64,000 bases of DNA from IMGVR_UViG_3300032245_001860:251853-315852; one strand, 5' to 3'. Positions 17,327-62,601 are shown, numbered from the stretch's first letter. Numbers and translations: made by a program. The notes: generated by a model not told the origin, from the letters alone.

Positions 17327-17988
17327 TGGGACTTGATCATTCTCCCTTAATTGTGACTGATGGATTGTCAGTATATCTTGATGCCGGAAACACAAGAAGC
17401 TATTCTGGATCTGGCACAACAGTATATGACTTGAGTGGATCTGGAAACACATCTGCGCTAACAAATGGGCCAACATATTCTTCTTCAAATTTAGGTTATT
17501 TTGTGTTAGATGGAACAAATGATTATATAAATGTAAATTCTCTCTCAAATATTTTATCAAAGACAGCGTACACTAAAATTGCTTATTTTTATGTAACAAG
17601 TTTTTCTACTGCCAATAATATTGTTAGTGGTGGAGTTTCAGGCGAACATGCATTTTGGTTAGCAGCTTCAAATAGATTGTATGGCGGTCACAATGGTGCA
17701 TGGACCACTGTAACAGGAGGTACAATTCTTTCTTTGAATACATGGTATTTTGGCGCAATATCATATAGTAGTTCAACTGGATGGAAGCTTTACTTAAATG
17801 GAAGAGAAGATGCTTCAAGTGCAAATACAACTACTTTCAATGGCAATCAAGAAATATTGATTGGTGCTTACGGTGCTGGAAATTACTTTACTGGAAGAAT
17901 ATCCAATGTTCAAGTTTACAACAGAGTATTATCCGCTACAGAAATAGTACAAAATTACAATGCTACTAAAAAAAGGTATGGGCTTTAA
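17326..17988 (+). CDS. LamG-like protein (copy 5)
   Basis: WYFGAISY...LYLNG, YNRVLSATEI. Confidence 0.85.
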   Translation: MGLDHSPLIVTDGLSVYLDAGNTRSYSGSGTTVYDLSGSGNTSALTNGPTYSSSNLGYFVLDGTNDYINVNSLSNILSKTAYTKIAYFYVTSFSTANNIVSGGVSGEHAFWLAASNRLYGGHNGAWTTVTGGTILSLNTWYFGAISYSSSTGWKLYLNGREDASSANTTTFNGNQEILIGAYGAGNYFTGRISNVQVYNRVLSATEIVQNYNATKKRYGL

Positions 17989-18668
17989 TGGGCATTGATT
18001 ATAATAATGTTATCGTCACTGATGGATTAGCTGTTTATTTAGATGCAGCAAATTCAAGAAGCTATTCAGGCTCTGGAAATACTTGGTACAATTTAATTTC
18101 CGGGGCTATTGGTGGAACTATTGTAGGAGTAGGTTATTCTACTTTAAGTGGTGGGTATTTTAATTTTACAGGAAGTCAATATATGACTTTTGCTTCTACT
18201 CCACCAATAGGACAGTCAACTTTGTCTTCTACTGTTGAAATTATATCTTACAGGAATTCAGCTGGTCCATTTGAAGTTATGTTAGGAGGTGGCCCATATA
18301 GCTTGAATCAAAGTTACTGGTTTGGTCATCGTGCAAATAACAATAATTTTATGATGGCTCATTGGGCTAATGACTCTGATAGTGCTACCCCAACAACAAA
18401 TATAGCTTGGAATCAATATGTTGCTGTTTTTGATAATAGTATAGGAAGAAGAGCTACATATTATAACAGTGCAATCTTGAATAATGAAGCATCTGGTGTG
18501 AACAATACATCTAATTCAAGTTATTTTTTAGGAGCATATAGAGAATCAGGTGGATCTCCTCAATATCATTATAGTGGGAGAATAGCTTCATTGAAAATTT
18601 ACAATAGAGTTTTATCACAAGCAGAAATCACACAAAATTATAATGCCATGAAAGCAAGGTTTAGATAA
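17988..18668 (+). CDS. LamG-like protein (copy 6)
   Basis: Conserved termini, YNRVLSQAEI. Confidence 0.85.
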   Translation: MGIDYNNVIVTDGLAVYLDAANSRSYSGSGNTWYNLISGAIGGTIVGVGYSTLSGGYFNFTGSQYMTFASTPPIGQSTLSSTVEIISYRNSAGPFEVMLGGGPYSLNQSYWFGHRANNNNFMMAHWANDSDSATPTTNIAWNQYVAVFDNSIGRRATYYNSAILNNEASGVNNTSNSSYFLGAYRESGGSPQYHYSGRIASLKIYNRVLSQAEITQNYNAMKARFR

Positions 18669-19996
18669 TGGGAATATCTGCTGGACCCAATTCTATTTCT
18701 GATACTCTGGCATTTCATATTGATCCAGCTAACCCAAGATCGTATCCAGGCTCAGGAAATACAATTTATGATTTATCAGGCAATGGAAATACAAGTTTCT
18801 TTACCAATGGTGCATTTTACCAGAACTATTCAAAAGGTGCAGTAAATGTAGATGGAAATGATGACTATATTTCAACTCCTTTGTTCAATCTTACATCTCC
18901 AGTCACTGTTTCTGTATGGGTGAAGAATGTAATTAATGATTCTCCTGTTTTTAGTGCTTCTGGTCCTGGAGTTACCTACGGAAACAATGAGGTTATTCAT
19001 TATTTTAGTGGTAAAAGCATTCTAATCGCTGGAAATCCTGCTGCTGGAAAATATTTTCAATTTCCGCAATTGAATTTGAACCAATGGTCTAATTTAGTGA
19101 TGACCAGAGACGCCAGCAACAATATGTCAGTATATCTAAATGGAATAGGTTCTACATCAAACACACAATCATATTCTAACACCTTACAAATGAACCAGAT
19201 AGGAAGATATTCTGCATTTACCAATATATATAATGCAAAAGGCTCAATTGGTGAAGTAAAGATTTATAATCGTGCTTTATCAGCTTCAGAAGTTTTGCAA
19301 AATTATAATGCTTCCATAAAAAGATATTCACCAGAAGAAAATATTGTTACTAATGGGTTAGTACTTAATTTAGACGCTGCAAATTATCTTTCTTATGCTG
19401 GTTCTGGAAATACAGCATTTGATTTGAGTGGTTTTGGAAATACTGCAACTCTGGTTAATGGCACTGGATTTACTGGAACAAATGGTGGAACGTTTCTTTT
19501 CGATGCTACTAATGATTATATTAGTATAGGCACTGCTTCTTCTGTAAAACCAACACAATTAACTTTTGCATGTTTATTTAAAATAAATGCAATAACATCG
19601 GTCAATGTAATAGCTGGAAAGCAAGGTGTTGGTAATGGTGCTGCATCTTACGCTTTAGTAGTACAAAATGGACAATTACATTTCAGGATAAGTAATTCAA
19701 GTGGCACAGAATACAATGCGTCAACTGCTTTTTCAAATACATCAAGTTATAATTATGCAGTTGGGGCTTATGATGGTTCAAATTTAATACTTTATCTCAA
19801 TGGGGCATCTGTAGGTGGTTCTTCCGTAGCTATTTCAATTGCATATTCTGACTCATATCCTTTGTTAATGGGTTATTATGCCAACTCGATTGCTACTAAT
19901 ATGAGTATTGGTTCTTTAAAACTATACAATCGAGTTTTATCTGCCCAAGAAATTCAACAAAACTTTAATGCTTTACGTGAGCGGTATAACATTTAA
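18668..19996 (+). CDS. Double LamG-like protein (copy 7, two fused units)
   Basis: Two complete units joined at KRYSPEENIVTNGLVLNLDA. Confidence 0.85.
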   Translation: MGISAGPNSISDTLAFHIDPANPRSYPGSGNTIYDLSGNGNTSFFTNGAFYQNYSKGAVNVDGNDDYISTPLFNLTSPVTVSVWVKNVINDSPVFSASGPGVTYGNNEVIHYFSGKSILIAGNPAAGKYFQFPQLNLNQWSNLVMTRDASNNMSVYLNGIGSTSNTQSYSNTLQMNQIGRYSAFTNIYNAKGSIGEVKIYNRALSASEVLQNYNASIKRYSPEENIVTNGLVLNLDAANYLSYAGSGNTAFDLSGFGNTATLVNGTGFTGTNGGTFLFDATNDYISIGTASSVKPTQLTFACLFKINAITSVNVIAGKQGVGNGAASYALVVQNGQLHFRISNSSGTEYNASTAFSNTSSYNYAVGAYDGSNLILYLNGASVGGSSVAISIAYSDSYPLLMGYYANSIATNMSIGSLKLYNRVLSAQEIQQNFNALRERYNI

Positions 19997-19998
19997 TT

Positions 19999-20685
19999 AT
20001 GGGACTTGCACATTCTCCAGCTGTAATTGTCGATGGTTTAGTATTGTATCTTGATGCATCCAATTCAAGGAGCTACTCTGGATCTGGACTTACTGTAAAT
20101 GGGTTGGTTAGCGGTATTGGTGGATCTCTTATAAATGGGGTTGGATTTACAAGCTCAAATAGTGGAAGTTTTGTTTTTGATGGCACTAATGATGGTATGT
20201 ATTTCTCTACATATAATTTTTCAACTGGTGATTTTACTATGGAAGTTTGGTTGAAATTGAATGCATATCCACCTACTGCCAATTCAGCTATTATAGCTAA
20301 TAGAAACGGCACAACTGACGATGGATGGCTTTTTGATATAAATAGTAACCAAAAAGCCAGATTAGTTTTTCAAAATAATGCTGGCACTGTTTACACTATT
20401 GAAACTTTAGATATTATAAATTTGAATCAATGGACAAATCTCACTGCTATAAGATCAAATACTTCCTTATCATTTTACAGAAATAGTATATTTCAAGCAA
20501 GTACATCCTTTCCGTCAAACTACAATATTAATTCGCCAATATCAAATGATTATGTAGGTAGATATCAAAGTTCAAGTGGTTTTTTGAGTGGAAATATATC
20601 GAAAATACAATACTACAACAGAGCCTTATCATCCACAGAAGTCCTCCAAAATTATAACACTACAAGAAAGAGATTTGGATTGTAA
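19999..20685 (+). CDS. LamG-like protein (copy 8)
   Basis: Conserved termini, FTMEVWLK, YNRALSSTEV. Confidence 0.85.
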   Translation: MGLAHSPAVIVDGLVLYLDASNSRSYSGSGLTVNGLVSGIGGSLINGVGFTSSNSGSFVFDGTNDGMYFSTYNFSTGDFTMEVWLKLNAYPPTANSAIIANRNGTTDDGWLFDINSNQKARLVFQNNAGTVYTIETLDIINLNQWTNLTAIRSNTSLSFYRNSIFQASTSFPSNYNINSPISNDYVGRYQSSSGFLSGNISKIQYYNRALSSTEVLQNYNTTRKRFGL

Positions 20686-21398
20686 TGGCAGTAGGATATA
20701 ACCCAAGCATTGTATCAGATGGATTAGCTTTGTATATAGATGCTGCTAATCAAAGAAGTTATTCTGGATCTGGAAATACTTGGTACGACCTTTCTGCAAA
20801 TTTAAACCATGCACAAAAAATTAATTCTCCAAATTACATAAATAATGCTGGAATTGGTTTTACATTTGATGGAAATGGAACTAATTATTTTGATCTTGAT
20901 AGTAAGTCATCCTTAGTAAATGGCAATGCAGGAACTGTTGGTGGATGGGTTAGATTTAATTCTGCCCCAAATAATGCCAACTATGTTTTTGTCAGTTATG
21001 GTGGAAATGCATATGGCGGAGGTTTTTTGCTTATATATACAGGATTAGATGGTGCAAATAGAGGACTTACATTTCAAGCTTTTGGTGGAAGTATAAGTCC
21101 TTCGGTTGATTGCGGTATTAGCTATGCTGCATCATCAATATACGCTGGACAAGACATTCATATGGTTGCAACTTGGACCACATCTGAAGTCAAACTTTAT
21201 TTAAACGGACAGCTCAAAGCTACAGCTGCAAACAATGCTGCAATTCCTTCAAAATCTACATTGAGAATAAGTAGTGAAGGCGGTAGATCAAGAGGTGTTA
21301 ATGGCAACGTATACACTTGCTCAATCTACAATCGTGCCCTTTCACAACAAGAAATTCTCCAAAATTTCAATGCTACAAGATTTAGATATGGAATATAA
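20685..21398 (+). CDS. LamG-like protein (copy 9)
   Basis: Conserved termini, HMVATW...LYLNG. Confidence 0.85.
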   Translation: MAVGYNPSIVSDGLALYIDAANQRSYSGSGNTWYDLSANLNHAQKINSPNYINNAGIGFTFDGNGTNYFDLDSKSSLVNGNAGTVGGWVRFNSAPNNANYVFVSYGGNAYGGGFLLIYTGLDGANRGLTFQAFGGSISPSVDCGISYAASSIYAGQDIHMVATWTTSEVKLYLNGQLKATAANNAAIPSKSTLRISSEGGRSRGVNGNVYTCSIYNRALSQQEILQNFNATRFRYGI

Positions 21399-30584: not shown

Positions 30585-31316
30585 ATGGGTCACTATTTTA
30601 ACCCCAATATTCCAAAAGAAAATTTTCATTGGGCAGTTGATGCAGCAAATATTCGTTCTTATAATGGAACTGGAACTGTCTGGTTTGATGTTGTTGATGC
30701 TAACAATTTAACTTTGACTAATACTCCAACATTCTCATCTTTAGGAGCAACTTCTAATTTTGCTTTCAATGGCTCAACGCAATATGCAGTAAATTCTTCT
30801 TTGATTAGTCCAGCTTTAATTCAAGGACCAATTACTGTCAATGTAATTTTTTCTCCAAATACTCTTACTGGCACCCAAAATGTATTTTCTTTATTTGACA
30901 ATGTAAACAGGGCATTGCAAATTGGTTACAACGGAACAACAGGAGCTGTTTGGAAGTTTGGCGGAACATCATTAGTAACTTACAATTATGCTGGTGTTGG
31001 AACAGTATGGCATGTTACATACACATGTGATGGATCTAATAATTCCAAAGTTTATGTAAATGGTCAATTAAATAACTCTGGTGTTGTCGCTACTGATACA
31101 GGTACACCAGTTTATTACACTGTTGGTACTTATGGCGCTGGTGTAGGCCAGTTTTTTAATGGCAAAGTATATTATGCTTCTATACATAAAAAAGTATTTA
31201 CAGATAGAGAAGTGGCTTCTATGTGGCATGCGCTAAGAAGAAGATATGGTTATGCAGGAATTGGTATTACGCCTGTTGGTGATGCTGTCGTTGGCGGACT
31301 CCAAGGAGGCCAATAA
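30585..31316 (+). CDS. LamG-like protein (second array, copy 1)
   Basis: DAANIRSY, WHVTYT...VYVNG. Confidence 0.8.
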   Translation: MGHYFNPNIPKENFHWAVDAANIRSYNGTGTVWFDVVDANNLTLTNTPTFSSLGATSNFAFNGSTQYAVNSSLISPALIQGPITVNVIFSPNTLTGTQNVFSLFDNVNRALQIGYNGTTGAVWKFGGTSLVTYNYAGVGTVWHVTYTCDGSNNSKVYVNGQLNNSGVVATDTGTPVYYTVGTYGAGVGQFFNGKVYYASIHKKVFTDREVASMWHALRRRYGYAGIGITPVGDAVVGGLQGGQ

Positions 31317-31984
31317 TGGGTGGTGGTGTTGGTCCAGTAGGACAAGCATTAGAAAATGTTGTTGTGAGAATTGATGCTGTTAACGCCAATTCATATTCAG
31401 GATCGGGAACAACTATTAACTCTTTACTTAATTCACAAACATTAAGCTCAAGTGGTGTGACTTTCATATCGGCAAAAGGCGAAAGCGTGTTTGTTTTTGG
31501 TGGCTCAGGATATGTTACATCATCTAATAATACTGGAGTATCAGGAACTCAAAACAAAACCATGGCAGCATGGGTTAGATTTGGAACTAAAGGCACTCAA
31601 GGAAGTATGTCAACAGGTGCAAATGGTGCAGGTACAGGGATGGCATTGGCAACTTCAAGCAGTGTCATATTGTTAGGTTATGGCAATTCTGGCACATTAA
31701 CTACATATTCTTATAATGCTCATCAATGGTATTACTTGGTATATACAAGTAGCTTAGTTTCTGGCTCAACCCATAATATTCAGTTGTATGTAAATGGTGG
31801 TTTAGCTCATTCTGCATTAGTTCCAAATATCAACTTGACAAATAATTCTCTACGAATTGGTTGTGACAATAGTGGTTTTGGCATGAGTGGTTTCATCTCA
31901 AGAGCAAATTTTTACAATAAAAGTTTATCGCCAAGAGAAATACAAAAGAACTATCAAAATTATAAAAATAGGTTTGGATTATAA
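31316..31984 (+). CDS. LamG-like protein (second array, copy 2)
   Basis: WYYLVYT...LYVNG, YNKSLSPREI. Confidence 0.8.
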   Translation: MGGGVGPVGQALENVVVRIDAVNANSYSGSGTTINSLLNSQTLSSSGVTFISAKGESVFVFGGSGYVTSSNNTGVSGTQNKTMAAWVRFGTKGTQGSMSTGANGAGTGMALATSSSVILLGYGNSGTLTTYSYNAHQWYYLVYTSSLVSGSTHNIQLYVNGGLAHSALVPNINLTNNSLRIGCDNSGFGMSGFISRANFYNKSLSPREIQKNYQNYKNRFGL

Positions 31985-31985
31985 A

Positions 31986-32672
31986 ATGGGACAAAAAGGC
32001 GGACCTAACATACCATTTGAAAATTTACAATTTGTCTTTGATCCAAGACACCCAAGCTCGTTGTCAGGAAATTATATAACTTTAATTGATTCAATAATAG
32101 GAAGCGCTACAGGAGCTACTCTTTCTGGAAGTGGAACAACTTTAGGAATAAATTTCTCAGCAATTTCTGATACTTTAAATTTTGGAAATATATCAAAAAT
32201 TAACCTGACTGCAAACCTTACAGTTATGGGATGGATTTATCCTAAAAGTTTTGGAGGTGGAAGCAGTGGAAGGATATTTGATAAGTTCAAGACTACCGTT
32301 CCTCAATCAGGATTTGCTTTATGGATTGATAATGCTATAGGAACAAATGCAATTGTTTATGGTACTGGGTGGACTGTTAGTACTACAGTGGCAAGATTGA
32401 GTAACCAAGTAAATTTAAATACTTGGCAACACTTTGCTGCTGTGCACAGCGGAACAACTGTTACATTTTATAAAAATGGCTCTTCTATAGGTTCAAGTTC
32501 AAGTATTACAGCTCCTACATCAGGAAGTGTTAATGCATGTATTGGAAATAACGCTGGTGGAACAAATAATTTTGATGGAATTTTAGGTGCAGTGAGAATT
32601 TACAGTCGTGCACTGTCTGCAACAGAAATATTGCAAACCTACAATTCTACAAAATCAAAATTTGGTTTATAA
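31986..32672 (+). CDS. LamG-like protein (second array, copy 3; start moved to MGQKGG)
   Basis: WQHFAAV...FYKNG, YSRALSATEI; paralogues start with MG. Confidence 0.8.
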   Translation: MGQKGGPNIPFENLQFVFDPRHPSSLSGNYITLIDSIIGSATGATLSGSGTTLGINFSAISDTLNFGNISKINLTANLTVMGWIYPKSFGGGSSGRIFDKFKTTVPQSGFALWIDNAIGTNAIVYGTGWTVSTTVARLSNQVNLNTWQHFAAVHSGTTVTFYKNGSSIGSSSSITAPTSGSVNACIGNNAGGTNNFDGILGAVRIYSRALSATEILQTYNSTKSKFGL

Positions 32673-42393: not shown

Positions 42394-42616
42394 TAGTTAT
42401 TATGATTCTGATGGTGTAAAAGCAATGGTCGCTAAAAAATTAGCAACTTTAGAACTTTCCAATGGTGAGATGAAAAAAAGCTTAGAGTTTTCTCTCAATC
42501 TTGATACAGAGCAATTAAAAAATATATATAAAAACCTGTCCAAAAATCAGCAAAAAACCAAATTTGGACAGGCTATAAAAATGATCATAGAAATCAAAGA
42601 AGAGTTTTATTTATAA
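42371..42616 (+). CDS. Hypothetical protein
   Basis: 81-aa ORF continuing the operon. Confidence 0.5.
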   Translation: MMSQKTYNSYYDSDGVKAMVAKKLATLELSNGEMKKSLEFSLNLDTEQLKNIYKNLSKNQQKTKFGQAIKMIIEIKEEFYL

Positions 42617-42987
42617 CCACAACCCCCGCAAGTGTCGTACTCTTCTCCTTCTATAGAGAAACTTTTGTTACATCCACAAGTTTTTGCAGCGTTTGGATTT
42701 TCTACCTTAAATCCAGATTGCATTCCATTTTCTTGATAATCTATAACACATCCATTGACATATTTTGCTGAACTATATTCTACTGCAATTTTTATATCTT
42801 TATCATAAACTATAATGTCATCGATTTCAGGCTCACCTTCTGCTAAAGCAAGTCCATATTGTAATCCTGAACATCCTCCACCAGACACATAAAAAGCAAG
42901 ATAAGCATCAGAAACAGATTGATCTTCTATAGTGTTCAAAATAATTTTAGCTGCAGTTTCAGTTAAAGAAATATTTAAATCATTCAT
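42607..42987 (-). CDS. iscA: A-type Fe-S cluster carrier (HesB/IscA/ErpA)
   Basis: GGGCSGLQY, GFKVENPNA, CGCNKSF. Confidence 0.92.
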   Translation of the reverse strand: MNDLNISLTETAAKIILNTIEDQSVSDAYLAFYVSGGGCSGLQYGLALAEGEPEIDDIIVYDKDIKIAVEYSSAKYVNGCVIDYQENGMQSGFKVENPNAAKTCGCNKSFSIEGEEYDTCGGCGYK

Positions 42988-42989
42988 AT

Positions 42990-43865
42990 TTACCTCAAAA
43001 TTTCAAACCTTGTTGCATGTATTACTGGTCTCACTAAAACTAAATCAAGTGCTGTGTCAACTAAAACTTGAGCAGTAATATCAGTTTCAGGCTCTACAGA
43101 ATCAGTATGCACTATTAAACCCTTTTTATGTTCTCCAACCACAATCTTTTGAGCAAAATATAACAGTGAAGCTTCTTTACTCTCAGCAATCTGAAATTTT
43201 TTCAACCAAGAGCTGACCCAATCTTGCTCAACAATGCTATTATTCTTTTTAACAACCCAGTTTTCTGGGTGTAATAATGCTAAATCATATCTTGTCGAAA
43301 GTGATTTTACATCTTCCATGTCATCAGCATTTGTAGCTTTTATGCAAAGTTCACCATCAAAGTTATCAATTAAAGTCTTTGTAACTTTTAATGGTTCTTC
43401 AATTTTAACATGGTAATCATGAAGCATTTCATTGAGTAATGTTTCAGCTTTGCCATAATTTTCATTTTGCAAAGCATCATCAAGCTCATAATGAATATCT
43501 AAAGTGGAAGCTAATTTCTTTAGATAATCTATAACTTCTTCTTCAGAAAGTAAAATTATATCTGTATCTTGAGTTCTTGCTAATTTTGGTTCTATAATTC
43601 TAAATTTGAATAAATCTTCAATGATAATTTTATAATAGCCCCAAGCTTGATGGTTGATATTTAGGAAACATTCATGTATGAGATTTCCATTTGACCCAAA
43701 AACATCTGTTGGTATAATTTGCATAAATGAATTTTGTTCTGGATCTACTAAGCCAAGAGAAGTTGTTTCAGTTCCTAATCTCATAGCACATCGAACAATA
43801 TCTTGATTATCTTCAACCCAAATGGCAATTCCTGCTTCTAAGGCATATTCTGGTGTTTTTTCCAT
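42990..43865 (-). CDS. Hypothetical protein
   Basis: 291-aa ORF with TATAAT 6 nt upstream of ATG. Confidence 0.7.
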   Translation of the reverse strand: MEKTPEYALEAGIAIWVEDNQDIVRCAMRLGTETTSLGLVDPEQNSFMQIIPTDVFGSNGNLIHECFLNINHQAWGYYKIIIEDLFKFRIIEPKLARTQDTDIILLSEEEVIDYLKKLASTLDIHYELDDALQNENYGKAETLLNEMLHDYHVKIEEPLKVTKTLIDNFDGELCIKATNADDMEDVKSLSTRYDLALLHPENWVVKKNNSIVEQDWVSSWLKKFQIAESKEASLLYFAQKIVVGEHKKGLIVHTDSVEPETDITAQVLVDTALDLVLVRPVIHATRFEILR

Positions 43866-43891: not shown

Positions 43892-44611
43892 TTAAATATC
43901 TTTGTGTTCAATGTGCAATTCTTCTATTTTTTTAAGAAATTTGTCTATGGTTCTGATAGATGGGTTTTCAATGGTAATCTCATGTAGATTGGGTTTGTTA
44001 GCTTCTTTATTTAAAACTATAATACTATCGTAATAAACAATCGATTCTAAATTTTTAGTGAAATAAGTATGATCAATTTCTATAGAGTTTCGGGAATTTA
44101 ATTGATCAATAATATTTTTAGTATGTTCAATGAAGCTTTTTGGATTTTTATAACCACCATCATCATAAAATTTAAAATAAGATGTATGGCAATCCTCTAC
44201 AAGATATATTCCATTATCAGATAGTAAATGTTCAAAAGCAAAATTTAAAGTTTGGATTTGATGATTGTTTTTATGACTTCCATCATCAAGAATTACATCA
44301 AATTTGCCATATTTAGCAGCAATTTTTTCAAGAAAATCAATGTCTGATTGATCTCCTATTTCAATTTTGATATTATTTTTTTCAAGATTTTTGCACTCAG
44401 GTTCAATATCTATTCCAAGAATTTGTGAGTTTTCTCCAAAGCAATAAGCCCACATATCTAAAGACCCGCCTTTCCAAACACCAATTTCAAGAAATTTGAT
44501 ATCTTTGTCTACAAATTTTCCAAAGTGTTTATTGTAGATATCTAAGTAATGGGTCCACTTATGAATGCTTCTATGAGTTCTGTTGTAAAAAAAATCTTCA
44601 AACTTATTCAT
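43892..44611 (-). CDS. Class I SAM-dependent methyltransferase of the type found in glycan clusters (start moved to MNKFED)
   Basis: HKWxHY, LEIGVWKGGSL, GIDI, GDQSD, DVILDDGSH, YLVED; TATAAT 7 nt before this ATG. Confidence 0.85.
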   Translation of the reverse strand: MNKFEDFFYNRTHRSIHKWTHYLDIYNKHFGKFVDKDIKFLEIGVWKGGSLDMWAYCFGENSQILGIDIEPECKNLEKNNIKIEIGDQSDIDFLEKIAAKYGKFDVILDDGSHKNNHQIQTLNFAFEHLLSDNGIYLVEDCHTSYFKFYDDGGYKNPKSFIEHTKNIIDQLNSRNSIEIDHTYFTKNLESIVYYDSIIVLNKEANKPNLHEITIENPSIRTIDKFLKKIEELHIEHKDI

Positions 44612-44632
44612 GAAAATAATTATACTGTTAAA

Positions 44633-44664
44633 TGAAAAGGGACAGGATGAGATCAATCCTGTCC
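44633..44664 (-). terminator. Intrinsic terminator ending the ncRNA
   Basis: GGACAGGAT-tgatctc-ATCCTGTCC followed by CTTTTCATTT on the minus strand. Confidence 0.8.
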
Positions 44665-45395
44665 AAGCAGTTTCGTTTACAGGATTACGATACTCGCAAC
44701 TTATATCTTGCCTGTTGATCCACTTAAAAAAGTCAAACTGCACAACCGCCTTATTATACTGGTGGCATTTCCAGTCTTATATTAGGTCTTTTACTGAAAT
44801 TACATAATAAATCGTTAAAATAATAGGTAACAATTTATTTTTTTTACTTGTTGCAAAAGTGTATTTTCATAAGCCAGGTTGTTTATTCCTAATACGAGAT
44901 ATGTCTATTTCTTGGGTAGATAAAGCCGTCAAATCTTCATCTTAACACGCCAGTTGCGCTTGCTTTCGTCATAAGCTATACCCGCTCTCTACAGAAGTGT
45001 GCATATCTTGTTGCTCCTGAATAAGGAATACAACTCACTTCAATGTCTACTGCATCACGAAGCAAGTAGACCTGATTTCAAGATTCTATTAGTTTTGAAA
45101 TTTATAGAAACTAATAAACCTTTAATCATGCTATACAGCCCTTGACCGTGACTTCTCGGACCATATAACTACCTTTATTTTCTTAGACTTTAATGCCGCT
45201 GATTGATACATATATTCAGCGTTTATATGTATGTTTTCATCTCCATCATAGTTCCAGGTTTCGGGCCTGAAACTCACAGAAAACAGGCTTGCTTGAACGA
45301 CCATTACTGGCGGGAGCAGTAGAGAATTGCTTTATCCCTTTTTTATATCTCACGATGTCAAGCCACCGAAATTGTTATTCAATTGTTAAAATACA
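44633..45395 (-). ncRNA. Large (~760 nt) structured ncRNA, GOLLD/ROOL-like size class; family not confirmed
   Basis: No credible ORF; consensus promoter upstream and terminator downstream; many helices. Confidence 0.75.
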
Positions 45396-45401
45396 AATAT
45401 T

Positions 45402-45429
45402 ATTATATTGTTATTGATATTTTTGTCAA
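45402..45429 (-). promoter_or_regulatory. Consensus sigma70 promoter driving the ncRNA
   Basis: TTGACA-N16-TATAAT on the minus strand. Confidence 0.85.
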
Positions 45430-46145
45430 TCACCTTTTGAAGGGTCATATTCAAAAATCAATGGCCATAAATTTTCAAATGTTCCTGACATTCTGATACC
45501 TGTCCCAATTGGATTATTAGCAATCACAATCAATTTATATAAACATGCCCACCATTCGTAAGGCTTATTTATAATCTTTGAAACTGGTACAATATGTTGA
45601 GCTCCAGAACCCCATTGATACGATCTTCCTTTATATGGGATATCCATCATTTTGCAAACAAAAGAAACTAAAGCGAGATCAGTTGCTACAATTTCAGATT
45701 CTTCAATATGATCGTCATAAATTAATGGGCATGTTATTTTTTCTTCTGGGCAAAATATTTTTCTGATTAAAATATTATAAAAACCATTTATGTAAAAATC
45801 ATCATCATTTGCAAATTCAAAAGGATTACAATGTGTGGTTAGAGGCATATAAGTGTCTTTATTAGCATTATTTATTATATCAATTGTATTTGCACAATGG
45901 TCAAATGGGTGTCCTTGTAAAAAAATTACAGTTTCTAATAAATGCAATTGATCATAATTTTCTAAAATACCACGAAGAAATGCTTCTGCTTCTCGCCCAA
46001 TATTAGGAGAATCTATTTTATGAATTTCAGGCCAAAGCCAGTCCTCTCCATGATTATATATAATATAATATGTCTTGAGATTTTTTATCCATTGAATGTC
46101 TTCATCATATCTGCATACTATAGTTAGCTTTTTGTAGTCTTGCAT
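45426..46145 (-). CDS. DUF3431-like putative glycosyltransferase
   Basis: VCRYDE, NIGREAEAF, FLQGHPFDH, GAQHIVP, FENLWP. Confidence 0.8.
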   Translation of the reverse strand: MQDYKKLTIVCRYDEDIQWIKNLKTYYIIYNHGEDWLWPEIHKIDSPNIGREAEAFLRGILENYDQLHLLETVIFLQGHPFDHCANTIDIINNANKDTYMPLTTHCNPFEFANDDDFYINGFYNILIRKIFCPEEKITCPLIYDDHIEESEIVATDLALVSFVCKMMDIPYKGRSYQWGSGAQHIVPVSKIINKPYEWWACLYKLIVIANNPIGTGIRMSGTFENLWPLIFEYDPSKGD

Positions 46146-46191
46146 ATATTTTTTATAAAACAATTGGCATTTGTATTTTGGATATATGAAA

Positions 46192-46605
46192 TTAATTTGC
46201 TTTCCATTTATCCGGAATATATATTTTTACAATATCTGATGACCACTTTTTTCCTTCATCACCACCATATAATCGCCATTCCCAGTAAGTAGGATTTTCA
46301 TCATTTTTAGAGTGGTTGAATCGTTTTTCAAAAGTATATTTATGAATCTTCAATACATCTTTTAATTCAAGGTATGATCTATTTGATAAGTCTCTTGCTA
46401 TATCATAATCTTTTTGAGACCCAAAATTAATCTTTCCTAAGCGTTTTTTGTAAGCTTCTTCTGCTATTTTTCTTATTTCATAAGGAATAAAAATTTTCTT
46501 ATCCATTATTGATTCTTTTGAAGCAAATTTGTTAAAAACTGTATCAGATAATTTAAATAGCTGTTTTGAATCAAGAATTTTGCAGAGGTTTATAATTTTG
46601 TTCAT
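46192..46605 (-). CDS. Hypothetical phage protein with leader motif and W.L[WY]GGD.G..W domain
   Basis: N-terminal IINLCKILDSKQLFKLSD; C-terminal WEWRLYGGDEGKKW. Confidence 0.7.
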   Translation of the reverse strand: MNKIINLCKILDSKQLFKLSDTVFNKFASKESIMDKKIFIPYEIRKIAEEAYKKRLGKINFGSQKDYDIARDLSNRSYLELKDVLKIHKYTFEKRFNHSKNDENPTYWEWRLYGGDEGKKWSSDIVKIYIPDKWKAN

Positions 46606-46653: not shown

Positions 46654-47286
46654 ATGCCGATAACACTTTCAGATGCTCTCATATTTACTCTTGCTTGGGA
46701 AGGAGGATTTACTAATCACCCTCTTGACCCTGGTGGAGCTACAAATTTTGGTATCATTCAAACAAGATATGATGAATATCGCAAATTCAAAAAACTGAAA
46801 ACCCAAACAGTAAAGCTTATTACCAAAGAAGAATACACAGAAATTTATGATAAATATTATTGGGATCCAGTAAGAGCTCAATATTTGTTGGGACCTTTAG
46901 GGCTTGCATTATTTGATACAGCAGTAAATTTGGGTGTAGGTGGAGCTCTAAGCAGATTGCAGTCTTCCATGAAATTGCCTGTCACTGGTAAATGGACCCA
47001 AAACATAAGTGACAAAATACATGATGCTAATCAATTGGATATAGCAATCAATATTTGTAAGCTAAGAATAGCAAAAAGATATGCAAGGGTCAAACAAAGA
47101 CCAGATCAAGTTGTCTTCTTAAAAGGATGGCTCAATAGAGATAATGCTTTATTGAGAAAAGTCAAATCTTTAGGTGGAATTTCTGTTTTGTCTATTGAGC
47201 CAGGTTACGATTTTGATTTAGAAGAGATTACTAATGAGTTTAATACAGATCTTCTGAAGGAACTGGAAGCTTTTGATTTGGATTAG
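46654..47286 (+). CDS. Endolysin, glycoside hydrolase family 108 with peptidoglycan-binding tail
   Basis: EGGFTNHPLDPGGATNFGI, FDTAVNLG, FLKGWLNR. Confidence 0.9.
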   Translation: MPITLSDALIFTLAWEGGFTNHPLDPGGATNFGIIQTRYDEYRKFKKLKTQTVKLITKEEYTEIYDKYYWDPVRAQYLLGPLGLALFDTAVNLGVGGALSRLQSSMKLPVTGKWTQNISDKIHDANQLDIAINICKLRIAKRYARVKQRPDQVVFLKGWLNRDNALLRKVKSLGGISVLSIEPGYDFDLEEITNEFNTDLLKELEAFDLD

Positions 47287-47974
47287 GTTGGTGATTCCAA
47301 ATAGATAGCCACACTCTTTCGCAATATGCAGCTATTTCATCACCTGGATTTATAGACTTCCAATCTTTAATCAATGTGTAAAATTCAGTCCACCATTCAA
47401 AATTTTTAGATTTGATATATGATGTGGGCACTATATATTGCGCTCCAGCAGAATAGGTAATTTCCTTAGAAGATAAATCTAATCCTAACATTTGGGCAAA
47501 AAATACAGAAGTGCTAATTTCTAAACCTCTGTCATCATTTAAGTCTATGTCTCCAGACAATTTTGTAAATGTTGCTGAAGGGGCAAATTGCTTTCTGAAA
47601 AGTTTACATATTGTTGCAGCTTCAAAATTAAAGTACGCTCTGTCACTTGGAAGTTTGTAAGTGACCATTGAATTTGCTAAAAATACAATTTCATTTGAAT
47701 TGTATTCGTTTATGGATTCGACTGGGTCATCATCATGGTCAAAAGGATTCCCTTGAATGAAAATAACACAATCATAATCATCCAGCATTTCATAGCATTC
47801 GACAATAGCTCTTGCGTAAGTTTCACACTCTCTGCCATAATTTTCAATATCAACTCTTGGAATATCTTCCCAAGGCCAATTTTCGCCTTTATTATAGATT
47901 AATATATCTCCATCTAATTCTTTAGACCATTCAATGTCCTCATTGTATCTTGCTATAATTGTTAATTTTTTCAT
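47240..47974 (-). CDS. DUF3431-like putative glycosyltransferase
   Basis: IARYNE, NYGRECETY, FIQGNPFDH, GAQYIVP, ERVW; ATGA overlap start. Confidence 0.8.
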   Translation of the reverse strand: MKKLTIIARYNEDIEWSKELDGDILIYNKGENWPWEDIPRVDIENYGRECETYARAIVECYEMLDDYDCVIFIQGNPFDHDDDPVESINEYNSNEIVFLANSMVTYKLPSDRAYFNFEAATICKLFRKQFAPSATFTKLSGDIDLNDDRGLEISTSVFFAQMLGLDLSSKEITYSAGAQYIVPTSYIKSKNFEWWTEFYTLIKDWKSINPGDEIAAYCERVWLSIWNHQPNPNQKLPVPSEDLY

Positions 47975-48684
47975 AAGTCTGAGTGTTGCCAAATTAATGG
48001 CCAAATCCTTTCTAAAATATATGTCCAAGCAATTTCATTCTTTTCTTTGCACAAATAATAAAATAAGTAATGAAGATTTTTCCACCATTCTAATGATTTG
48101 TTGGTAATTAAAAACGAGGGAACTGTGTATTGTGCCCCAACAGCCCAATAATTATCTTTATCTTGATGATCTAATCCCAAGATTGTACACATTGTCACAT
48201 TGTCTAAAAACCAATTTTTATTTGGTTCTTGATTTGTCACAGTGTTAGTATTCAAATCTAATTTTTGATATTTAGGAATAAATTCTTCATTCAAGTGATC
48301 TAAGTTCAGCATGCAATTTATTATGGAAGGATGAATATTGAATATTCTTCTATTGTCATTGTAAATATCTCTATTAATTGAATTAGACAAAGCAAGTATT
48401 TCATTTTTTTCATTATTGTTGATCATTTGAATAATATCTGGGCAATGATCAAAAGGATTTCCTTGCACAAAAGATATCAAATCATAATCTTTGAAAACTT
48501 CATAAAATTCAATAACGGCTCTGACAAAAGTTTCACCTTCTCTGCCATAATTTTCAATGTTTATTCTGGGAATATTTTCATAAGGCCAATCATCACCTTT
48601 ATTATAAATAACAATATCTCCAGACAATTCTTTAGACCATTCAATGTTTTCATTGAATCTTGCAATAATTGTTAGCTTTTTCAT
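47971..48684 (-). CDS. DUF3431-like putative glycosyltransferase
   Basis: IARFNE, NYGREGETF, FVQGNPFDH, GAQY, LERIWP; ATGA overlap start. Confidence 0.8.
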   Translation of the reverse strand: MKKLTIIARFNENIEWSKELSGDIVIYNKGDDWPYENIPRINIENYGREGETFVRAVIEFYEVFKDYDLISFVQGNPFDHCPDIIQMINNNEKNEILALSNSINRDIYNDNRRIFNIHPSIINCMLNLDHLNEEFIPKYQKLDLNTNTVTNQEPNKNWFLDNVTMCTILGLDHQDKDNYWAVGAQYTVPSFLITNKSLEWWKNLHYLFYYLCKEKNEIAWTYILERIWPLIWQHSDL

Positions 48685-50755: not shown

Positions 50756-51321
50756 TGGAAAAAGCATTAGAATATTTAGCAGATTTAGCTAATGAATTAG
50801 ATTCACAAAACGCACATAGATTAGCAGATAGCATTACAGCTCAATTAAAACAAGCATCAAAAGATTGGGACCATGAATACGATATGGTCAGAAATCAAAT
50901 GGAAACAGCTGAAAGAGCTATTGATGGTATTGAAGATGTTATTGGTGAAGATGGTGAAGGCAATTTGATGGCTTGGGTACAGTCAAAGATTACTAACGCT
51001 GTCGAAATGTTAGATGGAGTTTCTGACTATTTACAAAGCCAACATAAAACAGCTTCAGACAAAAATAAAGGTAAGAAATTAGGTAAACCTTTCCGTACTC
51101 CTGGTGGTCCTAAGAAATTTTCTGTTTATGTTAAAAATGACAAAGGCAATGTAGTCAAGGTTAACTTTGGAGATCCTAATATGGAGATCAAGAGAGATGA
51201 CCCAAAAAGAAGAAAAAACTTTAGAGCAAGACACAATTGCGATAATCCAGGACCTCGCACCAAAGCAAAATATTGGTCATGCAAGATGTGGTCAAAAAAG
51301 AATGTATCTGATTTGACTTAG
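50755..51321 (+). CDS. Leader-family protein with basic Cys-containing module
   Basis: LADLANELDSQNAHRLAD; KPFRTPGGPKKF...VNFGD...FRARHNC...YWSCKMW, a module I recognise from large-phage hypothetical proteins. Confidence 0.8.
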   Translation: MEKALEYLADLANELDSQNAHRLADSITAQLKQASKDWDHEYDMVRNQMETAERAIDGIEDVIGEDGEGNLMAWVQSKITNAVEMLDGVSDYLQSQHKTASDKNKGKKLGKPFRTPGGPKKFSVYVKNDKGNVVKVNFGDPNMEIKRDDPKRRKNFRARHNCDNPGPRTKAKYWSCKMWSKKNVSDLT

Positions 51322-51323
51322 AA

Positions 51324-51352
51324 AAAAAAGAGGACTGTAAAGTCCTCTTTTT
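51324..51352. terminator. Bidirectional intrinsic terminator
   Basis: AAAAAGAGGAC-loop-GTCCTCTTTTT between convergent genes. Confidence 0.85.
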
Positions 51353-51355
51353 AGT

Positions 51356-61416: not shown

Positions 61417-62601
61417 TTAATTATCTTCAAATAATCTTCCAGGATCTCCAAAGGAAATTCTGTCTGGTAAATTGTATTTTTGCTGATAAATATAATCTGA
61501 ATTCCAATTCAAATCAAACAATTGCAAGTTCATATCTTCAATTTTTATAGTTCTTGTAAATCTAACACCTACTAATAATGGAATAGCTTTAAGTTCAAGT
61601 TCAGGCATAGAATTCCATAAACCTAAAGCTATTTTTGTCCAGAACTTAAAATCACAAGAAGCAATTGTAATTGGTGAAGAAACTTTGAATGTTTTTCTTC
61701 TTTTTGTTTCAGTGTTGCGCCAAGACATATAAATAGTAATTCTTTTTGCACCAACTCTATGTTTTTGCAATCTGTCTATAGCTTTGTAAAGTAATGATTC
61801 AAATACCTCAAAAGCTCCTAAATCATCTCTTTTGCTGGGTGGTAAAACATGTGTATGGCCAAAAGACTTAGGTATTTCATTGTTAGATAAGCCATAATCA
61901 CATTGCAAAGAGCCACGAATCATATGCCACCACCGAGCACCTATGATACTGCCCCAAGCCTTCTTAAGTTTAAGTTCATCAATGTTATATAAATCTTCAA
62001 CAGTCTTGATATATGATTTATTTAATCTGGCTTCCATTCTTTCAGCTATGCCAGGAAGATCAGTAAGTTCAAGTTGTTTTATTTTATTTTCAGCATCTTT
62101 GCCATAATAAGTAAAACCATTTGGCTTATTCATATCTGCTGCAACTTTTGCTAAAAACACATTTCTTGCAACACCAATGGAGCAAGTAATAGTTTCTCCA
62201 ATTGCATCCATCAAATCAAGTTTCAATAAACCAGCTAATATCTCACAATCAAAATCATCTTCTTCATTTATATGACAAGACATTTCATCTATTGAAAGCA
62301 CTTGTATCTTAGTAAAATGTTTACTTAAAACTTCTAATATTTGATTGTGTATTTCAACATATCTTTTAGGTCTGGCCTCACAAACAATGATTCCAGGGAT
62401 TTTTTCTTTTGCGACACTAACTCTTGTGCCAGTCTTTACTCCTAACCTTTTTGCCTGATAAGAAGCAGCAATGGCACAAGTGTAGTCTGAAATACAAGGC
62501 ACAACTATCAAAGGTTTGTTTCTATATTCTTTGTTGTCTTGTTGCTCTACTGAAGCGTAAAAAGAATCAAAGTCTATAAATAATCTTCTATATAATGCCA
62601 T
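61417..62601 (-). CDS. dinB: Y-family DNA polymerase (DinB/UmuC-like)
   Basis: IDFDSFYASVEQ, AASYQAK..GVK, SIDE, SIGVA.N.FLAK. Confidence 0.92.
   Translation of the reverse strand: MALYRRLFIDFDSFYASVEQQDNKEYRNKPLIVVPCISDYTCAIAASYQAKRLGVKTGTRVSVAKEKIPGIIVCEARPKRYVEIHNQILEVLSKHFTKIQVLSIDEMSCHINEEDDFDCEILAGLLKLDLMDAIGETITCSIGVARNVFLAKVAADMNKPNGFTYYGKDAENKIKQLELTDLPGIAERMEARLNKSYIKTVEDLYNIDELKLKKAWGSIIGARWWHMIRGSLQCDYGLSNNEIPKSFGHTHVLPPSKRDDLGAFEVFESLLYKAIDRLQKHRVGAKRITIYMSWRNTETKRRKTFKVSSPITIASCDFKFWTKIALGLWNSMPELELKAIPLLVGVRFTRTIKIEDMNLQLFDLNWNSDYIYQQKYNLPDRISFGDPGRLFEDN

What the first reader, a model, noticed from the sequence alone, without database searches (positions are those of the whole stretch)
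44633..45429. ~760-nt independently transcribed, highly structured non-coding RNA
Seen: the only long gap without a credible gene in a densely coding window. On the minus strand it starts after TTGACA-N16-TATAAT (45429-45402) and ends at a 9-bp terminator hairpin (44664-44633). Helices include CCA-GUAA-UGG (GNRA loop, ~45301-45310), GUUUCAGG/CCUGGAAC (45251-45273), UAUUAGUUU/AAACUAAUA (45087-45116), GUCUAC/GUAGAC (45045-45071), GUUGUAUUCCU (~45030) able to pair locally or with AGGAAUAAACAAC (~44885), ACUGG/CCAGU (44758-44775), and GCAGUUU/AAACUGC enclosing ACAGG/CCUGU near the 3' end. Established: GOLLD (~800 nt) and ROOL (~600 nt) are giant phage-associated RNAs of unknown function. Inference: a GOLLD-like member or a new large RNA class, strongly expressed by host polymerase. 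No tRNA lies next to it here.
Basis: partly seen in the sequence, partly recalled or inferred. Interest (0 to 1): 0.85.

Follow-up and report, generated by a model that had tools for sequence, protein, structure and literature searches.

The report
Divergent GOLLD RNA in freshwater jumbo phage
The 814-base gene-free gap encodes a real, about 760-nucleotide, highly structured non-coding RNA that is a divergent member of the known phage "GOLLD" giant-RNA family, found in a group of large freshwater phages and present in many lake and river RNA libraries.

Summary
The gap 44612-45425 has a perfect TTGACA-N16-TATAAT on the minus strand, a 9-bp hairpin plus U-tract at 44664-44635, and no conserved ORF. 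I collected 30 full-length homologues from lake, river and marine metagenomes, plus a more distant clade from IMG/VR. They are 66-94% identical and 738-790 nt long. All sit at the same syntenic site in large phage contigs of 166-358 kb.

The 185-pair consensus structure is 98.2% paired, against 37-42% when partners are slid. 51 pairs show compensatory double changes, against 3-13 in the slid controls.

Rfam found nothing at gathering score. Sensitive scans of short stretches do match the GOLLD model (RF02032) over its whole length: E=1e-12 for a relative and 1e-8 for the window, with the GOLLD signature motifs. Models built from this family hit the known GOLLD RNAs of phiCbK and PegLeg at the expected places.

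This lineage differs from typical GOLLDs in three ways. It scores far below Rfam's cut-off, it has no tRNA nearby, and its 5' domain could not be matched to known GOLLDs. Contigs from three metatranscriptomes cover only the RNA, not its flanks.

Function remains unknown. By homology, self-assembly into an RNA cage is the most likely mechanism.

The parts
45402..45429 (-). Sigma-70-type promoter: -35 TTGACA at 45429-45424, 16-nt spacer, -10 TATAAT at 45407-45402. The stop codon of the upstream gene (45428-45426) lies inside the -35 hexamer.
   Evidence: 12/12 match. The TATAAT is conserved at the same distance from the RNA in nearly all of the 27 aligned homologues, while the -35 varies (TTGACA, TTGGAA, ATGGAA).
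44633..45394 (-). GOLLD-family RNA, about 762 nt. The predicted 5' end is near the conserved G at 45394, 8 nt after the -10 box. The 3' end lies in the U-tract after the terminal hairpin.
   Evidence: Homologues are 738-790 nt and 66-94% identical. The structure has 185 pairs, 98.2% paired, with 51 pairs showing double changes. Many conserved G-U pairs fit only the minus strand. There is no conserved ORF. RNA-library contigs lie only within 44649-45369.
45047..45394 (-). 5' domain. A short leader is followed by the closing helix GCUUGAC/GUCAAGC, a three-hairpin junction that includes CCA-GUAA-UGG, the hairpin GUUUCAGG/CCUGGAAC, a hairpin with a possible loop pseudoknot (GCUG...CAGC), the long hairpin 45135-45096, the UAUUAGUUU/AAACUAAUA hairpin and the GUCUAC/GUAGAC hairpin.
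   Evidence: Helices 2-17, many with compensatory changes. The domain is collinear in the distant clade. Model R2, built from it, finds nothing convincing in known GOLLD loci, so homology of this domain to known GOLLD 5' domains is not shown.
44633..45046 (-). 3' domain, homologous to the conserved GOLLD 3' region that the Rfam model RF02032 covers.
   Evidence: the window hit is reported at 44644-44860, 38.3 bits, E=9.6e-9; the whole equivalent domain of L038 aligns to model positions 1-416 at 51.8 bits, E about 1e-12.
44994..45040 (-). First hairpin of the 3' domain: GAAGUG/CACUUC enclosing GUUGU..UCCU/AGGA..GCAAC. It is the most conserved block of the family.
   Evidence: Invariant in clades 1 and 2 and fully compensated in clade 3. 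It aligns to GOLLD model positions 1-53. Model R3 built on it hits the start of phiCbK GOLLD at E=6.8e-4 and the start of PegLeg GOLLD at E=1.6. It has the highest depth in all four runs laid.
44953..44958 (-). CGCAAC in the joining region. It is complementary to the loop GUUGCG at 44700-44695. This is a candidate long-range or inter-molecular kissing contact.
   Evidence: UCGCAA or CGCAAC in the joining region and UUGCGA in the loop are kept in all three clades, although the surrounding sequence and spacing change. Both sides are nearly invariant, so there is no covariation. This is an inference.
44779..44895 (-). Long-range helix GUAUUAGG (44895-44888) / CCUAAUAU (44786-44779). It encloses the variable linker (about 44878-44791), which holds small lineage-specific hairpins and no tRNA.
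   Evidence: Helix 23, with double changes at two pairs. It aligns to the helix that Rfam marks as the GOLLD pseudoknot. The linker differs in length and sequence between clades. ARAGORN finds no tRNA.
44667..44775 (-). 3' core. It contains hairpin ACUGG/CCAGU (44775-44758), helix GCAGUUU/AAACUGC (44741-44735 with 44673-44667), the GUGGAU motif, helix ACAGG/CCUGU (44715-44711 with 44683-44679), and an inserted hairpin with loop GUUGCGA (44700-44694).
   Evidence: Helices 27-31 all have compensatory changes. The signature motifs GUGGAUAA, GG.AA, UAAUCC and AAACGA align to upper-case positions of the GOLLD consensus.
44635..44664 (-). Terminal stem-loop: 9 bp with loop UGAUCUC, at 44664-44640, followed by a U-tract at 44638-44635. 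It equals the last GOLLD hairpin and probably also acts as an intrinsic terminator.
   Evidence: One search lists it as a terminator-like site. Helix 32 has six pairs with double changes. Its loop AAUCUCA matches the GOLLD consensus GUAaUCUCA.
45426..46163 (-). Upstream neighbour: a DUF3431 protein of 245 aa. It is not part of the RNA. It is one of several paralogues that are variably present beside the RNA in relatives.
43892..44611 (-). Downstream neighbour: a class I SAM-dependent methyltransferase of 239 aa. It is not part of the RNA. Relatives carry a different 152-aa gene here, or none.

Best explanation
The gap encodes a divergent member of the GOLLD family of giant ornate phage RNAs. 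It is carried by a lineage of large freshwater phages with contigs of 166-358 kb.

It is made as its own transcript of about 760 nt from a sigma-70-type promoter. It ends at a stem-loop plus U-tract that is at the same time the conserved last hairpin of GOLLD.

Like other GOLLDs it has two parts: a lineage-specific 5' domain, and a 3' domain that carries the family's signature helices and motifs. The two are joined through a long-range helix that encloses a variable linker.

By homology with the GOLLD RNA solved by cryo-EM, which is a closed 14-mer cage whose 3' domains form the rings and whose 5' domains form the caps, it most likely works as a protein-free, self-assembling multimer that accumulates to high levels during infection.

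Shown here: real structure, family relationship, conserved position in the phage genomes, presence in RNA libraries. Inferred: the transcript ends, multimer formation, and any role. What the cage holds or does is unknown for the whole family.

My confidence is about 0.85 that it is a GOLLD relative and about 0.45 that it forms a GOLLD-type cage.
For: Family relationship:
- cmscan with RF02032 GOLLD gives 51.8 bits, E=1.5e-12 and 8.7e-13, over model positions 1-416 in relative L038.
- The window gives 38.3 bits, E=9.6e-9.
- Aligned signature motifs are GUAUUC in the first hairpin, GUGGAUAA, GG.AA...UAAUCC, AAACGA, and the terminal loop AAUCUCA.
- Reciprocal test R3: hit at phiCbK L046 1909-1980(-), E=6.8e-4, exactly where the published GOLLD region starts. 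Hit at PegLeg L048 1549-1608(+), at that region's start.
- Reciprocal test R1: weak hits (E 0.24-0.86) at or near the 3' end of all three published GOLLD regions, on the right strand. The region coordinates come from PMC12286853 supplement 6.

Structure:
- 30 homologues plus a distant clade.
- 98.2% of cells paired, against 37-42% when partners are slid.
- 51 pairs with double changes, against 3-13 when slid.
- 0 of 500 shuffles reach the observed values.

Own transcript:
- Conserved -10 box and covarying terminal hairpin.
- Adjacent genes differ between relatives.
- At least 24 RNA libraries from many studies hold 14-25% of its 31-mers.
- In three RNA runs, contigs lie only within 44649-45369.

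Architecture and mechanism of GOLLD come from PMC12286853.
Against: - All scores are far below Rfam's gathering score (150 bits). The distant clade (L045) gives no GOLLD hit at all, even at E<=10.
- The 5' domain could not be matched to known GOLLD loci.
- Reciprocal hits with R1 are individually not significant. R3 missed the Vibrio phage GOLLD.
- No tRNA is nearby, unlike many GOLLDs.
- The RNA-library evidence comes from unstranded contigs, and DNA carry-over cannot be excluded. Flank coverage is also low in the DNA run, because most relatives there have other flanks, so missing flank coverage in RNA runs is weaker evidence than it looks.
- Multimer formation is untested. The residues that form the inter-chain bridges in the solved GOLLD could not be mapped here.
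Confidence: 0.75

Rival explanations
1. A new class of giant phage RNA that shares only a short 3' module with GOLLD by convergence or recombination. It would have its own fold and function.
For: Scores are a quarter to a third of Rfam's gathering score. Clade 3 gives no hit. The 5' half has no detectable counterpart in phiCbK, PG07 or PegLeg. There is no tRNA association.
Against: The Rfam alignment in L038 spans the whole 416-position model, not one module, at E about 1e-12. The first hairpin and the last 150 nt independently find known GOLLDs at the right places. A variable 5' region and a conserved 3' region are what the literature describes for GOLLD itself (PMC12286853).
Confidence: 0.1
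2. A very long cis-acting leader, such as a riboswitch or attenuator, that controls the downstream gene through the terminal hairpin.
For: The RNA ends in a terminator-like hairpin only about 25 nt before the start codon of the next gene on the same strand.
Against: The downstream gene differs between relatives: a methyltransferase in the window, an unrelated 152-aa gene in most, and F3 directly in clade 3. The RNA is conserved throughout. No alternative anti-terminator pairing is conserved. RNA-library contigs do not run on into the downstream gene. The terminal hairpin is a structural element of GOLLD.
Confidence: 0.03
3. A decayed or unrecognised protein-coding gene, or a set of small ORFs.
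For: A 57-codon ORF (45304-45131) lies in the RNA strand.
Against: The longest ORFs differ in place and strand between homologues. The window's ATG is read as TTG, AAG or GTG in most others. Most gap runs are not multiples of three. Substitutions are compensatory across helices.
Confidence: 0.01
4. A mobile or self-splicing element, such as a group I or II intron or a transposon-guide RNA, inserted between two genes.
For: Its size and rich structure. The neighbouring gene content is variable.
Against: No Rfam intron or ribozyme hit at E<=10. The flanking genes are complete and unrelated to each other. No endonuclease, transposase or reverse transcriptase lies beside it. It sits at the same syntenic position between F0 and F3 in all three clades. 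It occurs once in the window.
Confidence: 0.01

Closest known systems
GOLLD RNA (Rfam RF02032). Examples are env-38, solved by cryo-EM as a 14-mer cage, and the copies in Caulobacter phage phiCbK, Vibrio phage PG07 and Mycobacterium phage PegLeg.
   Same: - Phage-encoded and about 750-800 nt.
- Two-domain layout with a variable linker enclosed by a long-range helix.
- The 3' domain aligns to the whole Rfam model with significant E-values and shares the signature motifs, including the terminal loop AAUCUCA.
- Aquatic occurrence.
- Apparently abundant as RNA.
   Different: - Scores are 38-52 bits against a gathering score of 150, so standard annotation misses it. One clade is not detectable at all.
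- No tRNA lies beside it or inside the linker.
- It has an extra hairpin (loop GUUGCGA) inside a loop of the GOLLD 3' core, and a hairpin ACUGG/CCAGU that the model treats as insertions.
- The 5' domain is not matched to known GOLLDs.
- The terminal stem is lengthened and followed by a U-tract.
- It sits in an accessory-gene island, not a tRNA island.
ROOL RNA (Rfam RF03087)
   Same: A large, ornate, phage- or prophage-encoded RNA of unknown function that forms an RNA-only cage (PMC12286853).
   Different: No Rfam match to ROOL at E<=10 in any of the stretches scanned. ROOL has intertwined 5' and 3' regions and is about 600 nt.
phi29 prohead RNA (pRNA)
   Same: A phage-encoded structured RNA that acts as a homo-oligomer held together by loop-loop pairing. 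This comparison rests on my own knowledge.
   Different: pRNA is about 170 nt, binds the portal and drives DNA packaging. There is no sequence or structure similarity and no link to packaging genes here.

Membership tests
GOLLD RNA (RF02032) | Statistically significant match in sequence and secondary structure to the conserved 3'-region covariance model | tested here: met
   L038: 51.8 bits, E=1.5e-12 and 8.7e-13, model positions 1-416. Window: 38.3 bits, E=9.6e-9. Scaled up to the whole 64-kb window, the window's E-value would still be about 1e-6.
GOLLD RNA (RF02032) | Reaches Rfam's curated gathering score of 150 bits. This is an annotation cut-off, not a biological property. | tested here: not met
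   No hit at gathering score in the window or in 12 related loci. The best scores are 38-52 bits. Clade 3 gives no hit at E<=10. I therefore file it as a divergent relative, not as a typical member.
GOLLD RNA (RF02032) | Signature elements of the 3' region: first hairpin with GUAUU, long-range helix around the linker, GUGGAUAA...GG.AA...UAAUCC...AAAG core, terminal hairpin with loop UAAUCUCA | tested here: met
   All are aligned to the consensus at high posterior probability. The helices are supported by compensatory changes within this family.
GOLLD RNA (RF02032) | Reciprocal detection: a model of this family finds accepted GOLLD RNAs | tested here: inconclusive
   R3 finds the phiCbK start at E=6.8e-4 and the PegLeg start at E=1.6, and misses PG07. 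R1 finds hits at or near the 3' ends of all three, but only at E 0.24-0.86. The positions and strands are right. The scores are weak because the models have an effective sequence number of 1.4-2.
GOLLD RNA (RF02032) | Bipartite build: conserved 3' region, less conserved 5' region, variable linker between them (PMC12286853) | tested here: met
   The 5' domain spans 45394-45047, the linker about 44878-44791, and the 3' domain 45046-44633. The linker differs in length and sequence between clades. The 5' domain is not detectable in other GOLLD loci, which agrees with 'less conserved'.
GOLLD RNA (RF02032) | Encoded by phages or prophages | tested here: met
   The source is an IMG/VR viral contig of 316 kb, and relatives lie on contigs of 166-358 kb. 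The window holds virion-protein and tail-fibre PHROG hits and a lysozyme.
GOLLD RNA (RF02032) | Often next to tRNA genes or with a tRNA in the linker. This is frequent but not obligatory. | tested here: not met
   ARAGORN finds no tRNA in the 64-kb window or in 11 related loci. The control loci phiCbK and PegLeg do have them.
GOLLD RNA (RF02032) | Forms a closed homo-14-mer cage through defined inter-chain bridges | not testable with these tools
   This needs the transcript and mass photometry or cryo-EM. The only hint is a conserved 6-bp complementarity between joining-region CGCAAC and loop GUUGCG. It could correspond to the published L20 with J13/15 kissing bridge.
GOLLD RNA (RF02032) | RNA accumulates during lytic growth | tested here: inconclusive
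   At least 24 metatranscriptome runs hold parts of it, and contigs in three runs cover only the RNA. The data are unstranded contigs from uncultured communities, so neither timing nor the absence of DNA carry-over is shown.
ROOL RNA (RF03087) | Match to the ROOL covariance model | tested here: not met
   No ROOL hit at E<=10 in the window, L038 or L045.

The most novel reading that the evidence does not exclude
This would be a distinct GOLLD subclass. It keeps the ring-forming 3' domain but carries a cap-forming 5' domain unrelated to that of the solved GOLLD. It would then assemble into a cage of different size or symmetry, or work without the tRNA link. GOLLD-type RNAs, including clades that current models cannot see, would be among the most abundant phage transcripts in fresh waters worldwide.
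Probability: 0.3. Interest if true: 0.6.

Novelty: new member of a known kind. Interest (0 to 1): 0.4.

Why it matters
GOLLD is one of the largest bacterial-world RNAs after ribosomal RNA, and it forms a protein-free cage. Its function is still unknown.

This lineage shows that the family reaches well beyond what the Rfam cut-off recovers. It extends into 166-358-kb freshwater phages, where it keeps one fixed genomic position, has its own promoter and lacks any tRNA neighbour. It turns up in RNA libraries from lakes, rivers, estuaries and the sea.

That gives three things:
- New, divergent sequences that sharpen covariation maps of intra- and inter-chain contacts.
- A natural test of which GOLLD features are dispensable, namely tRNA linkage and a particular 5' cap.
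- A reminder that gathering-score scans miss real family members.

It does not by itself reveal the function, and the hosts are uncultured.

Tried and rejected
- Rfam at gathering score on the window and on 12 related loci found nothing. The same was true of an E-value scan on 1.3 kb. The hit appeared only when 800 nt or less was given, because the filters are then laxer.
- blastn and tblastn against GenBank phages, using the RNA, a 20-kb stretch and the upstream protein, found no match.
- Looking for relatives through the flanking proteins in IMG/VR found only the source contig and one unrelated methyltransferase locus.
- Exact 20-25-mers in IMG/VR and in GTDB genomes gave either the source contig or chance hits, shown to be unrelated by alignment or blastn: L005, L006, L020, L022, L039, L040.
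- The single-sequence folding energy does not discriminate between strands.
- The 5'-domain model R2 against known GOLLD loci gave no convincing hit.
- Motifs of this family are absent as literal strings from the published GOLLD alignment text. That file is gapped and truncated, so this says little.
- AU-rich palindromes in the loop of the 45087-45116 hairpin were considered as symmetric kissing loops. I dropped this because such palindromes are expected by chance in AU-only loops.
- The neighbouring proteins F0, F1 and F3 have no Pfam or PHROG family, and F3 gave no useful Atlas lead. The context therefore gives no functional clue.
- The original GOLLD paper (PMC4140389) is not held.

Full report
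WHAT IS THERE

The window is part of IMGVR_UViG_3300032245_001860, a 315,852-bp viral contig. It has about 30-38% G+C and carries giant structural genes, a GH108 lysozyme and PHROG virion and tail hits.

A DUF3431 gene (45426-46163, minus) and a SAM-methyltransferase gene (43892-44611, minus) are separated by 814 nt. This stretch holds no credible ORF and is the largest such gap in the window.

On the minus strand it begins with a perfect TTGACA-N16-TATAAT (45429-45402). It ends with a 9-bp hairpin plus U-tract (44664-44635).

The minimum free energy is lower than that of shuffles, but equally so on both strands (z about -3.7). A single-sequence fold therefore decides nothing.

FINDING RELATIVES

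GenBank phages hold nothing similar, either to the RNA or to its flanks. The k-mer index of public runs was more telling:
- Many freshwater DNA runs hold 40-50% of the region's 31-mers.
- At least 24 RNA libraries hold 14-25% of them. These come from lakes, rivers, estuaries and marine water, and from about 20 studies.

I laid the contigs of three RNA runs and one DNA run on 43900-46100. This showed:
- In the RNA runs, contigs lie only between 44649 and 45369, and none lie on either flanking gene.
- In the DNA run the flanks are covered at 3-12x, while three blocks of the gap reach 60-110x.
- The gap is a mosaic of conserved blocks (about 45369-45247, 45085-44908, 44785-44730) separated by stretches that differ between relatives.

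The RNA is therefore much more widespread than this phage's neighbouring genes.

A 20-mer from the best-conserved block recovered 32 loci from public metagenome assemblies. Thirty of them hold a full-length homologue, 70-94% identical over about 780 nt. Degenerate patterns on invariant 5' positions then recovered one more relative and a distant clade from IMG/VR: L041, and L042-L045. Several other k-mer hits were chance matches: L005, L006, L020, L022, and the two GTDB genomes L039 and L040.

IT IS A STRUCTURED RNA WITH ITS OWN TRANSCRIPTION SIGNALS

The 27-sequence alignment A2 shows a TATAAT at a fixed distance upstream of the conserved body in nearly all members. The terminal hairpin has a stem that changes by paired substitutions while its loop stays.

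RNAalifold predicts 149-185 pairs. Counted on the alignment:
- 98.2% of cells are standard pairs. With the partners slid by 1-3 columns, the figure is 37-42%.
- 51 pairs carry changes on both sides, against 3-13 in the slid controls and 26.7 +/- 2.9 in shuffles.
- 0 of 500 shuffles reach the observed value.
- 23 of the 32 helices have at least one compensated pair.

Many invariant G-U pairs fit only the minus strand. The distant clade keeps the same helices with further double changes. For example, GUUUCAGG/CCUGGAAC becomes GUUUUGCA/UGUGGAAC, and GUUG/CAAC becomes GUCA/UGAC.

No ORF is conserved, and most gaps are not multiples of three. The RNA is 738-790 nt long in the family and about 762 nt in the window (45394-44633).

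The optional long-range pairing of GUUGUAUUCCU with AGGAAUAAACAAC is specific to the window's own clade.

WHAT IT IS

Rfam at gathering score finds nothing in the window or in 12 related loci. An E-value scan of 1.3 kb also failed. When 800 nt or less was given, so that the filters are laxer, the GOLLD model RF02032 appeared:
- L038: 51.8 bits, E=1.5e-12 and 8.7e-13, aligned over model positions 1-416.
- Window: 38.3 bits, E=9.6e-9.

The Rfam model covers only the conserved 3' region of GOLLD. In L038 it spans exactly the 3' half of the RNA. The alignment places these elements:
- the first hairpin (GAAGUGAGUUGUAUUCC...GGAGCAAC...GCACACUUC);
- the long-range helix that Rfam marks as a pseudoknot (GUGUUAGU with ACUAACAU), which encloses the variable linker;
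- the core motifs GUGGAUAA, GG.AA...UAAUCC and AAACGA;
- the last hairpin, with loop UAAUCUCA.

In the solved GOLLD, the loop of the last hairpin (L27) ties seven regions together (PMC12286853).

For a reciprocal test I fetched three accepted GOLLD loci listed in the supplement of that paper: phiCbK, Vibrio phage PG07 and Mycobacterium phage PegLeg. I then searched them with models built only from this family:
- R3, the first hairpin of the 3' domain, hits phiCbK at 1909-1980(-) with E=6.8e-4, precisely at the start of the published region. It hits PegLeg at 1549-1608(+), at that region's start, with E=1.6. It misses PG07.
- R1, the last 154 nt, gives weak hits (E 0.24-0.86) at or near the 3' end of the published region in all three, on the right strand.
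- R2, the 5' domain, gives nothing convincing.

The distant clade gives no Rfam hit at all, although it is collinear with the window RNA.

I conclude that this is a divergent branch of the GOLLD family. The relationship of the 3' domain is well supported. The relationship of the 5' domain to other GOLLDs is open, which agrees with the published description of a 'less conserved 5' region'.

GENOMIC SETTING

In all three clades the RNA lies between the same two genes on the same strand: F0 (137-146 aa; window 46192-46605) and F3 (291 aa; window 42990-43865). The genes that touch it vary:
- none to two DUF3431 paralogues, or a UDP-galactopyranose mutase, upstream;
- a 152-aa gene with a signal-peptide-like N-terminus, the methyltransferase (window only), or nothing, downstream.

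F0, F1 and F3 have no family hit. Nearby genes are of the accessory type, including an IscA-like protein and Fe/Mn superoxide dismutase.

There is no tRNA in the window or in 11 related loci. The control GOLLD loci, by contrast, sit in tRNA islands. The RNA occurs once in the window.

HOW IT PROBABLY WORKS

Shown: a discrete, conserved, highly structured RNA gene of the GOLLD family, with promoter and terminator signals, which is present in RNA libraries.

Inferred from the family (PMC12286853): the solved GOLLD forms a closed 14-mer cage of 380 A. Its 3' domains build the rings, its 5' domains build the caps, and the variable linker points inwards. GOLLD RNA rises during phage lysis. Its cargo and role are unknown, with tRNAs and ribosomes suggested.

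The window RNA has the same domain order and the same 3' elements, so a self-assembling multimer is the most likely mode of action. My confidence in this is about 0.45.

One concrete candidate contact emerged. The loop GUUGCG(A) (44700-44694) and CGCAAC in the joining region after the first 3' hairpin (44958-44953) stay complementary over 5-7 bp in all three clades, even though spacing and context change. This would fit the published kissing bridge between L20 and J13/15. There is no covariation, however, and I could not map the helix numbers.

Rivals are listed with their evidence: a new class with a shared module, a cis-leader, a coding remnant, and a mobile element. None fits the data as well.

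LIMITS

- The RNA-library evidence rests on unstranded assembled contigs. DNA carry-over is not excluded.
- The missing flank coverage is partly explained by relatives having other flanks.
- The transcript ends are predicted, not mapped.
- The homologue set was ascertained with probes from conserved blocks, which makes those blocks look invariant.
- E-values from my own models are rough.
- The host is unknown. The sigma-70-type promoter only suggests a host with that promoter type.

VERDICT

It is a new, divergent member lineage of a known family. That is useful to those studying GOLLD, but it is not a new kind of thing.

Noticed in passing
window 14564-21398 and 30585-32672: A head-to-tail array of nine, plus three further, paralogous genes of about 210-260 aa, 25-39% identical. 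The gene at 18668-19996 is a two-copy fusion and hits a PHROG 'virion structural protein' family. The arrays sit between giant ORFs of 1131-2440 aa.
   Followed up: partly
window 45426-46163 and 47240-48028; L038 4630-5748; L029 4407-5937: DUF3431 paralogues, a UDP-galactopyranose mutase and, in the window only, a SAM-methyltransferase are variably inserted right beside the RNA. The site looks like a hot spot for sugar-modification accessory genes.
   Followed up: partly
window 46192-46605 (F0) and 42990-43865 (F3): These are the two genes that flank the RNA in all three clades. They have no Pfam or PHROG family, and F3 gave no useful Atlas lead. Their constant linkage to a GOLLD RNA may or may not be functional.
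   Followed up: partly
window 45426-45429: The TGA stop codon of the upstream DUF3431 gene lies inside the -35 hexamer of the RNA's promoter.
   Followed up: no
L042-L045 (for example L045 4079-4880): Four IMG/VR contigs, one of 166 kb, carry an identical, much more divergent copy of the RNA. It is collinear with the window RNA and keeps its helices, but it gives no Rfam GOLLD hit at E<=10. Its terminal loop reads AAGUCUAA instead of UAAUCUCA.
   Followed up: partly
L013 6546-7211, L013 5592-5963, window 42607-42987: An Fe/Mn superoxide dismutase and an IscA-like iron-sulphur assembly protein are encoded a few genes downstream of the RNA in this phage lineage.
   Followed up: no
window 51262-51353 (+): Weak match (15 bits, E=0.19) of the 3'-end model R1. 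It is probably only a terminator-like hairpin.
   Followed up: no
window 61417-62601 (-): The gene that hits the PHROG 'DNA polymerase' family resembles DinB/Pol IV of diverse phages, at only 25-32% identity. No close cultured relative of this phage exists in the GenBank phage collection.
   Followed up: partly
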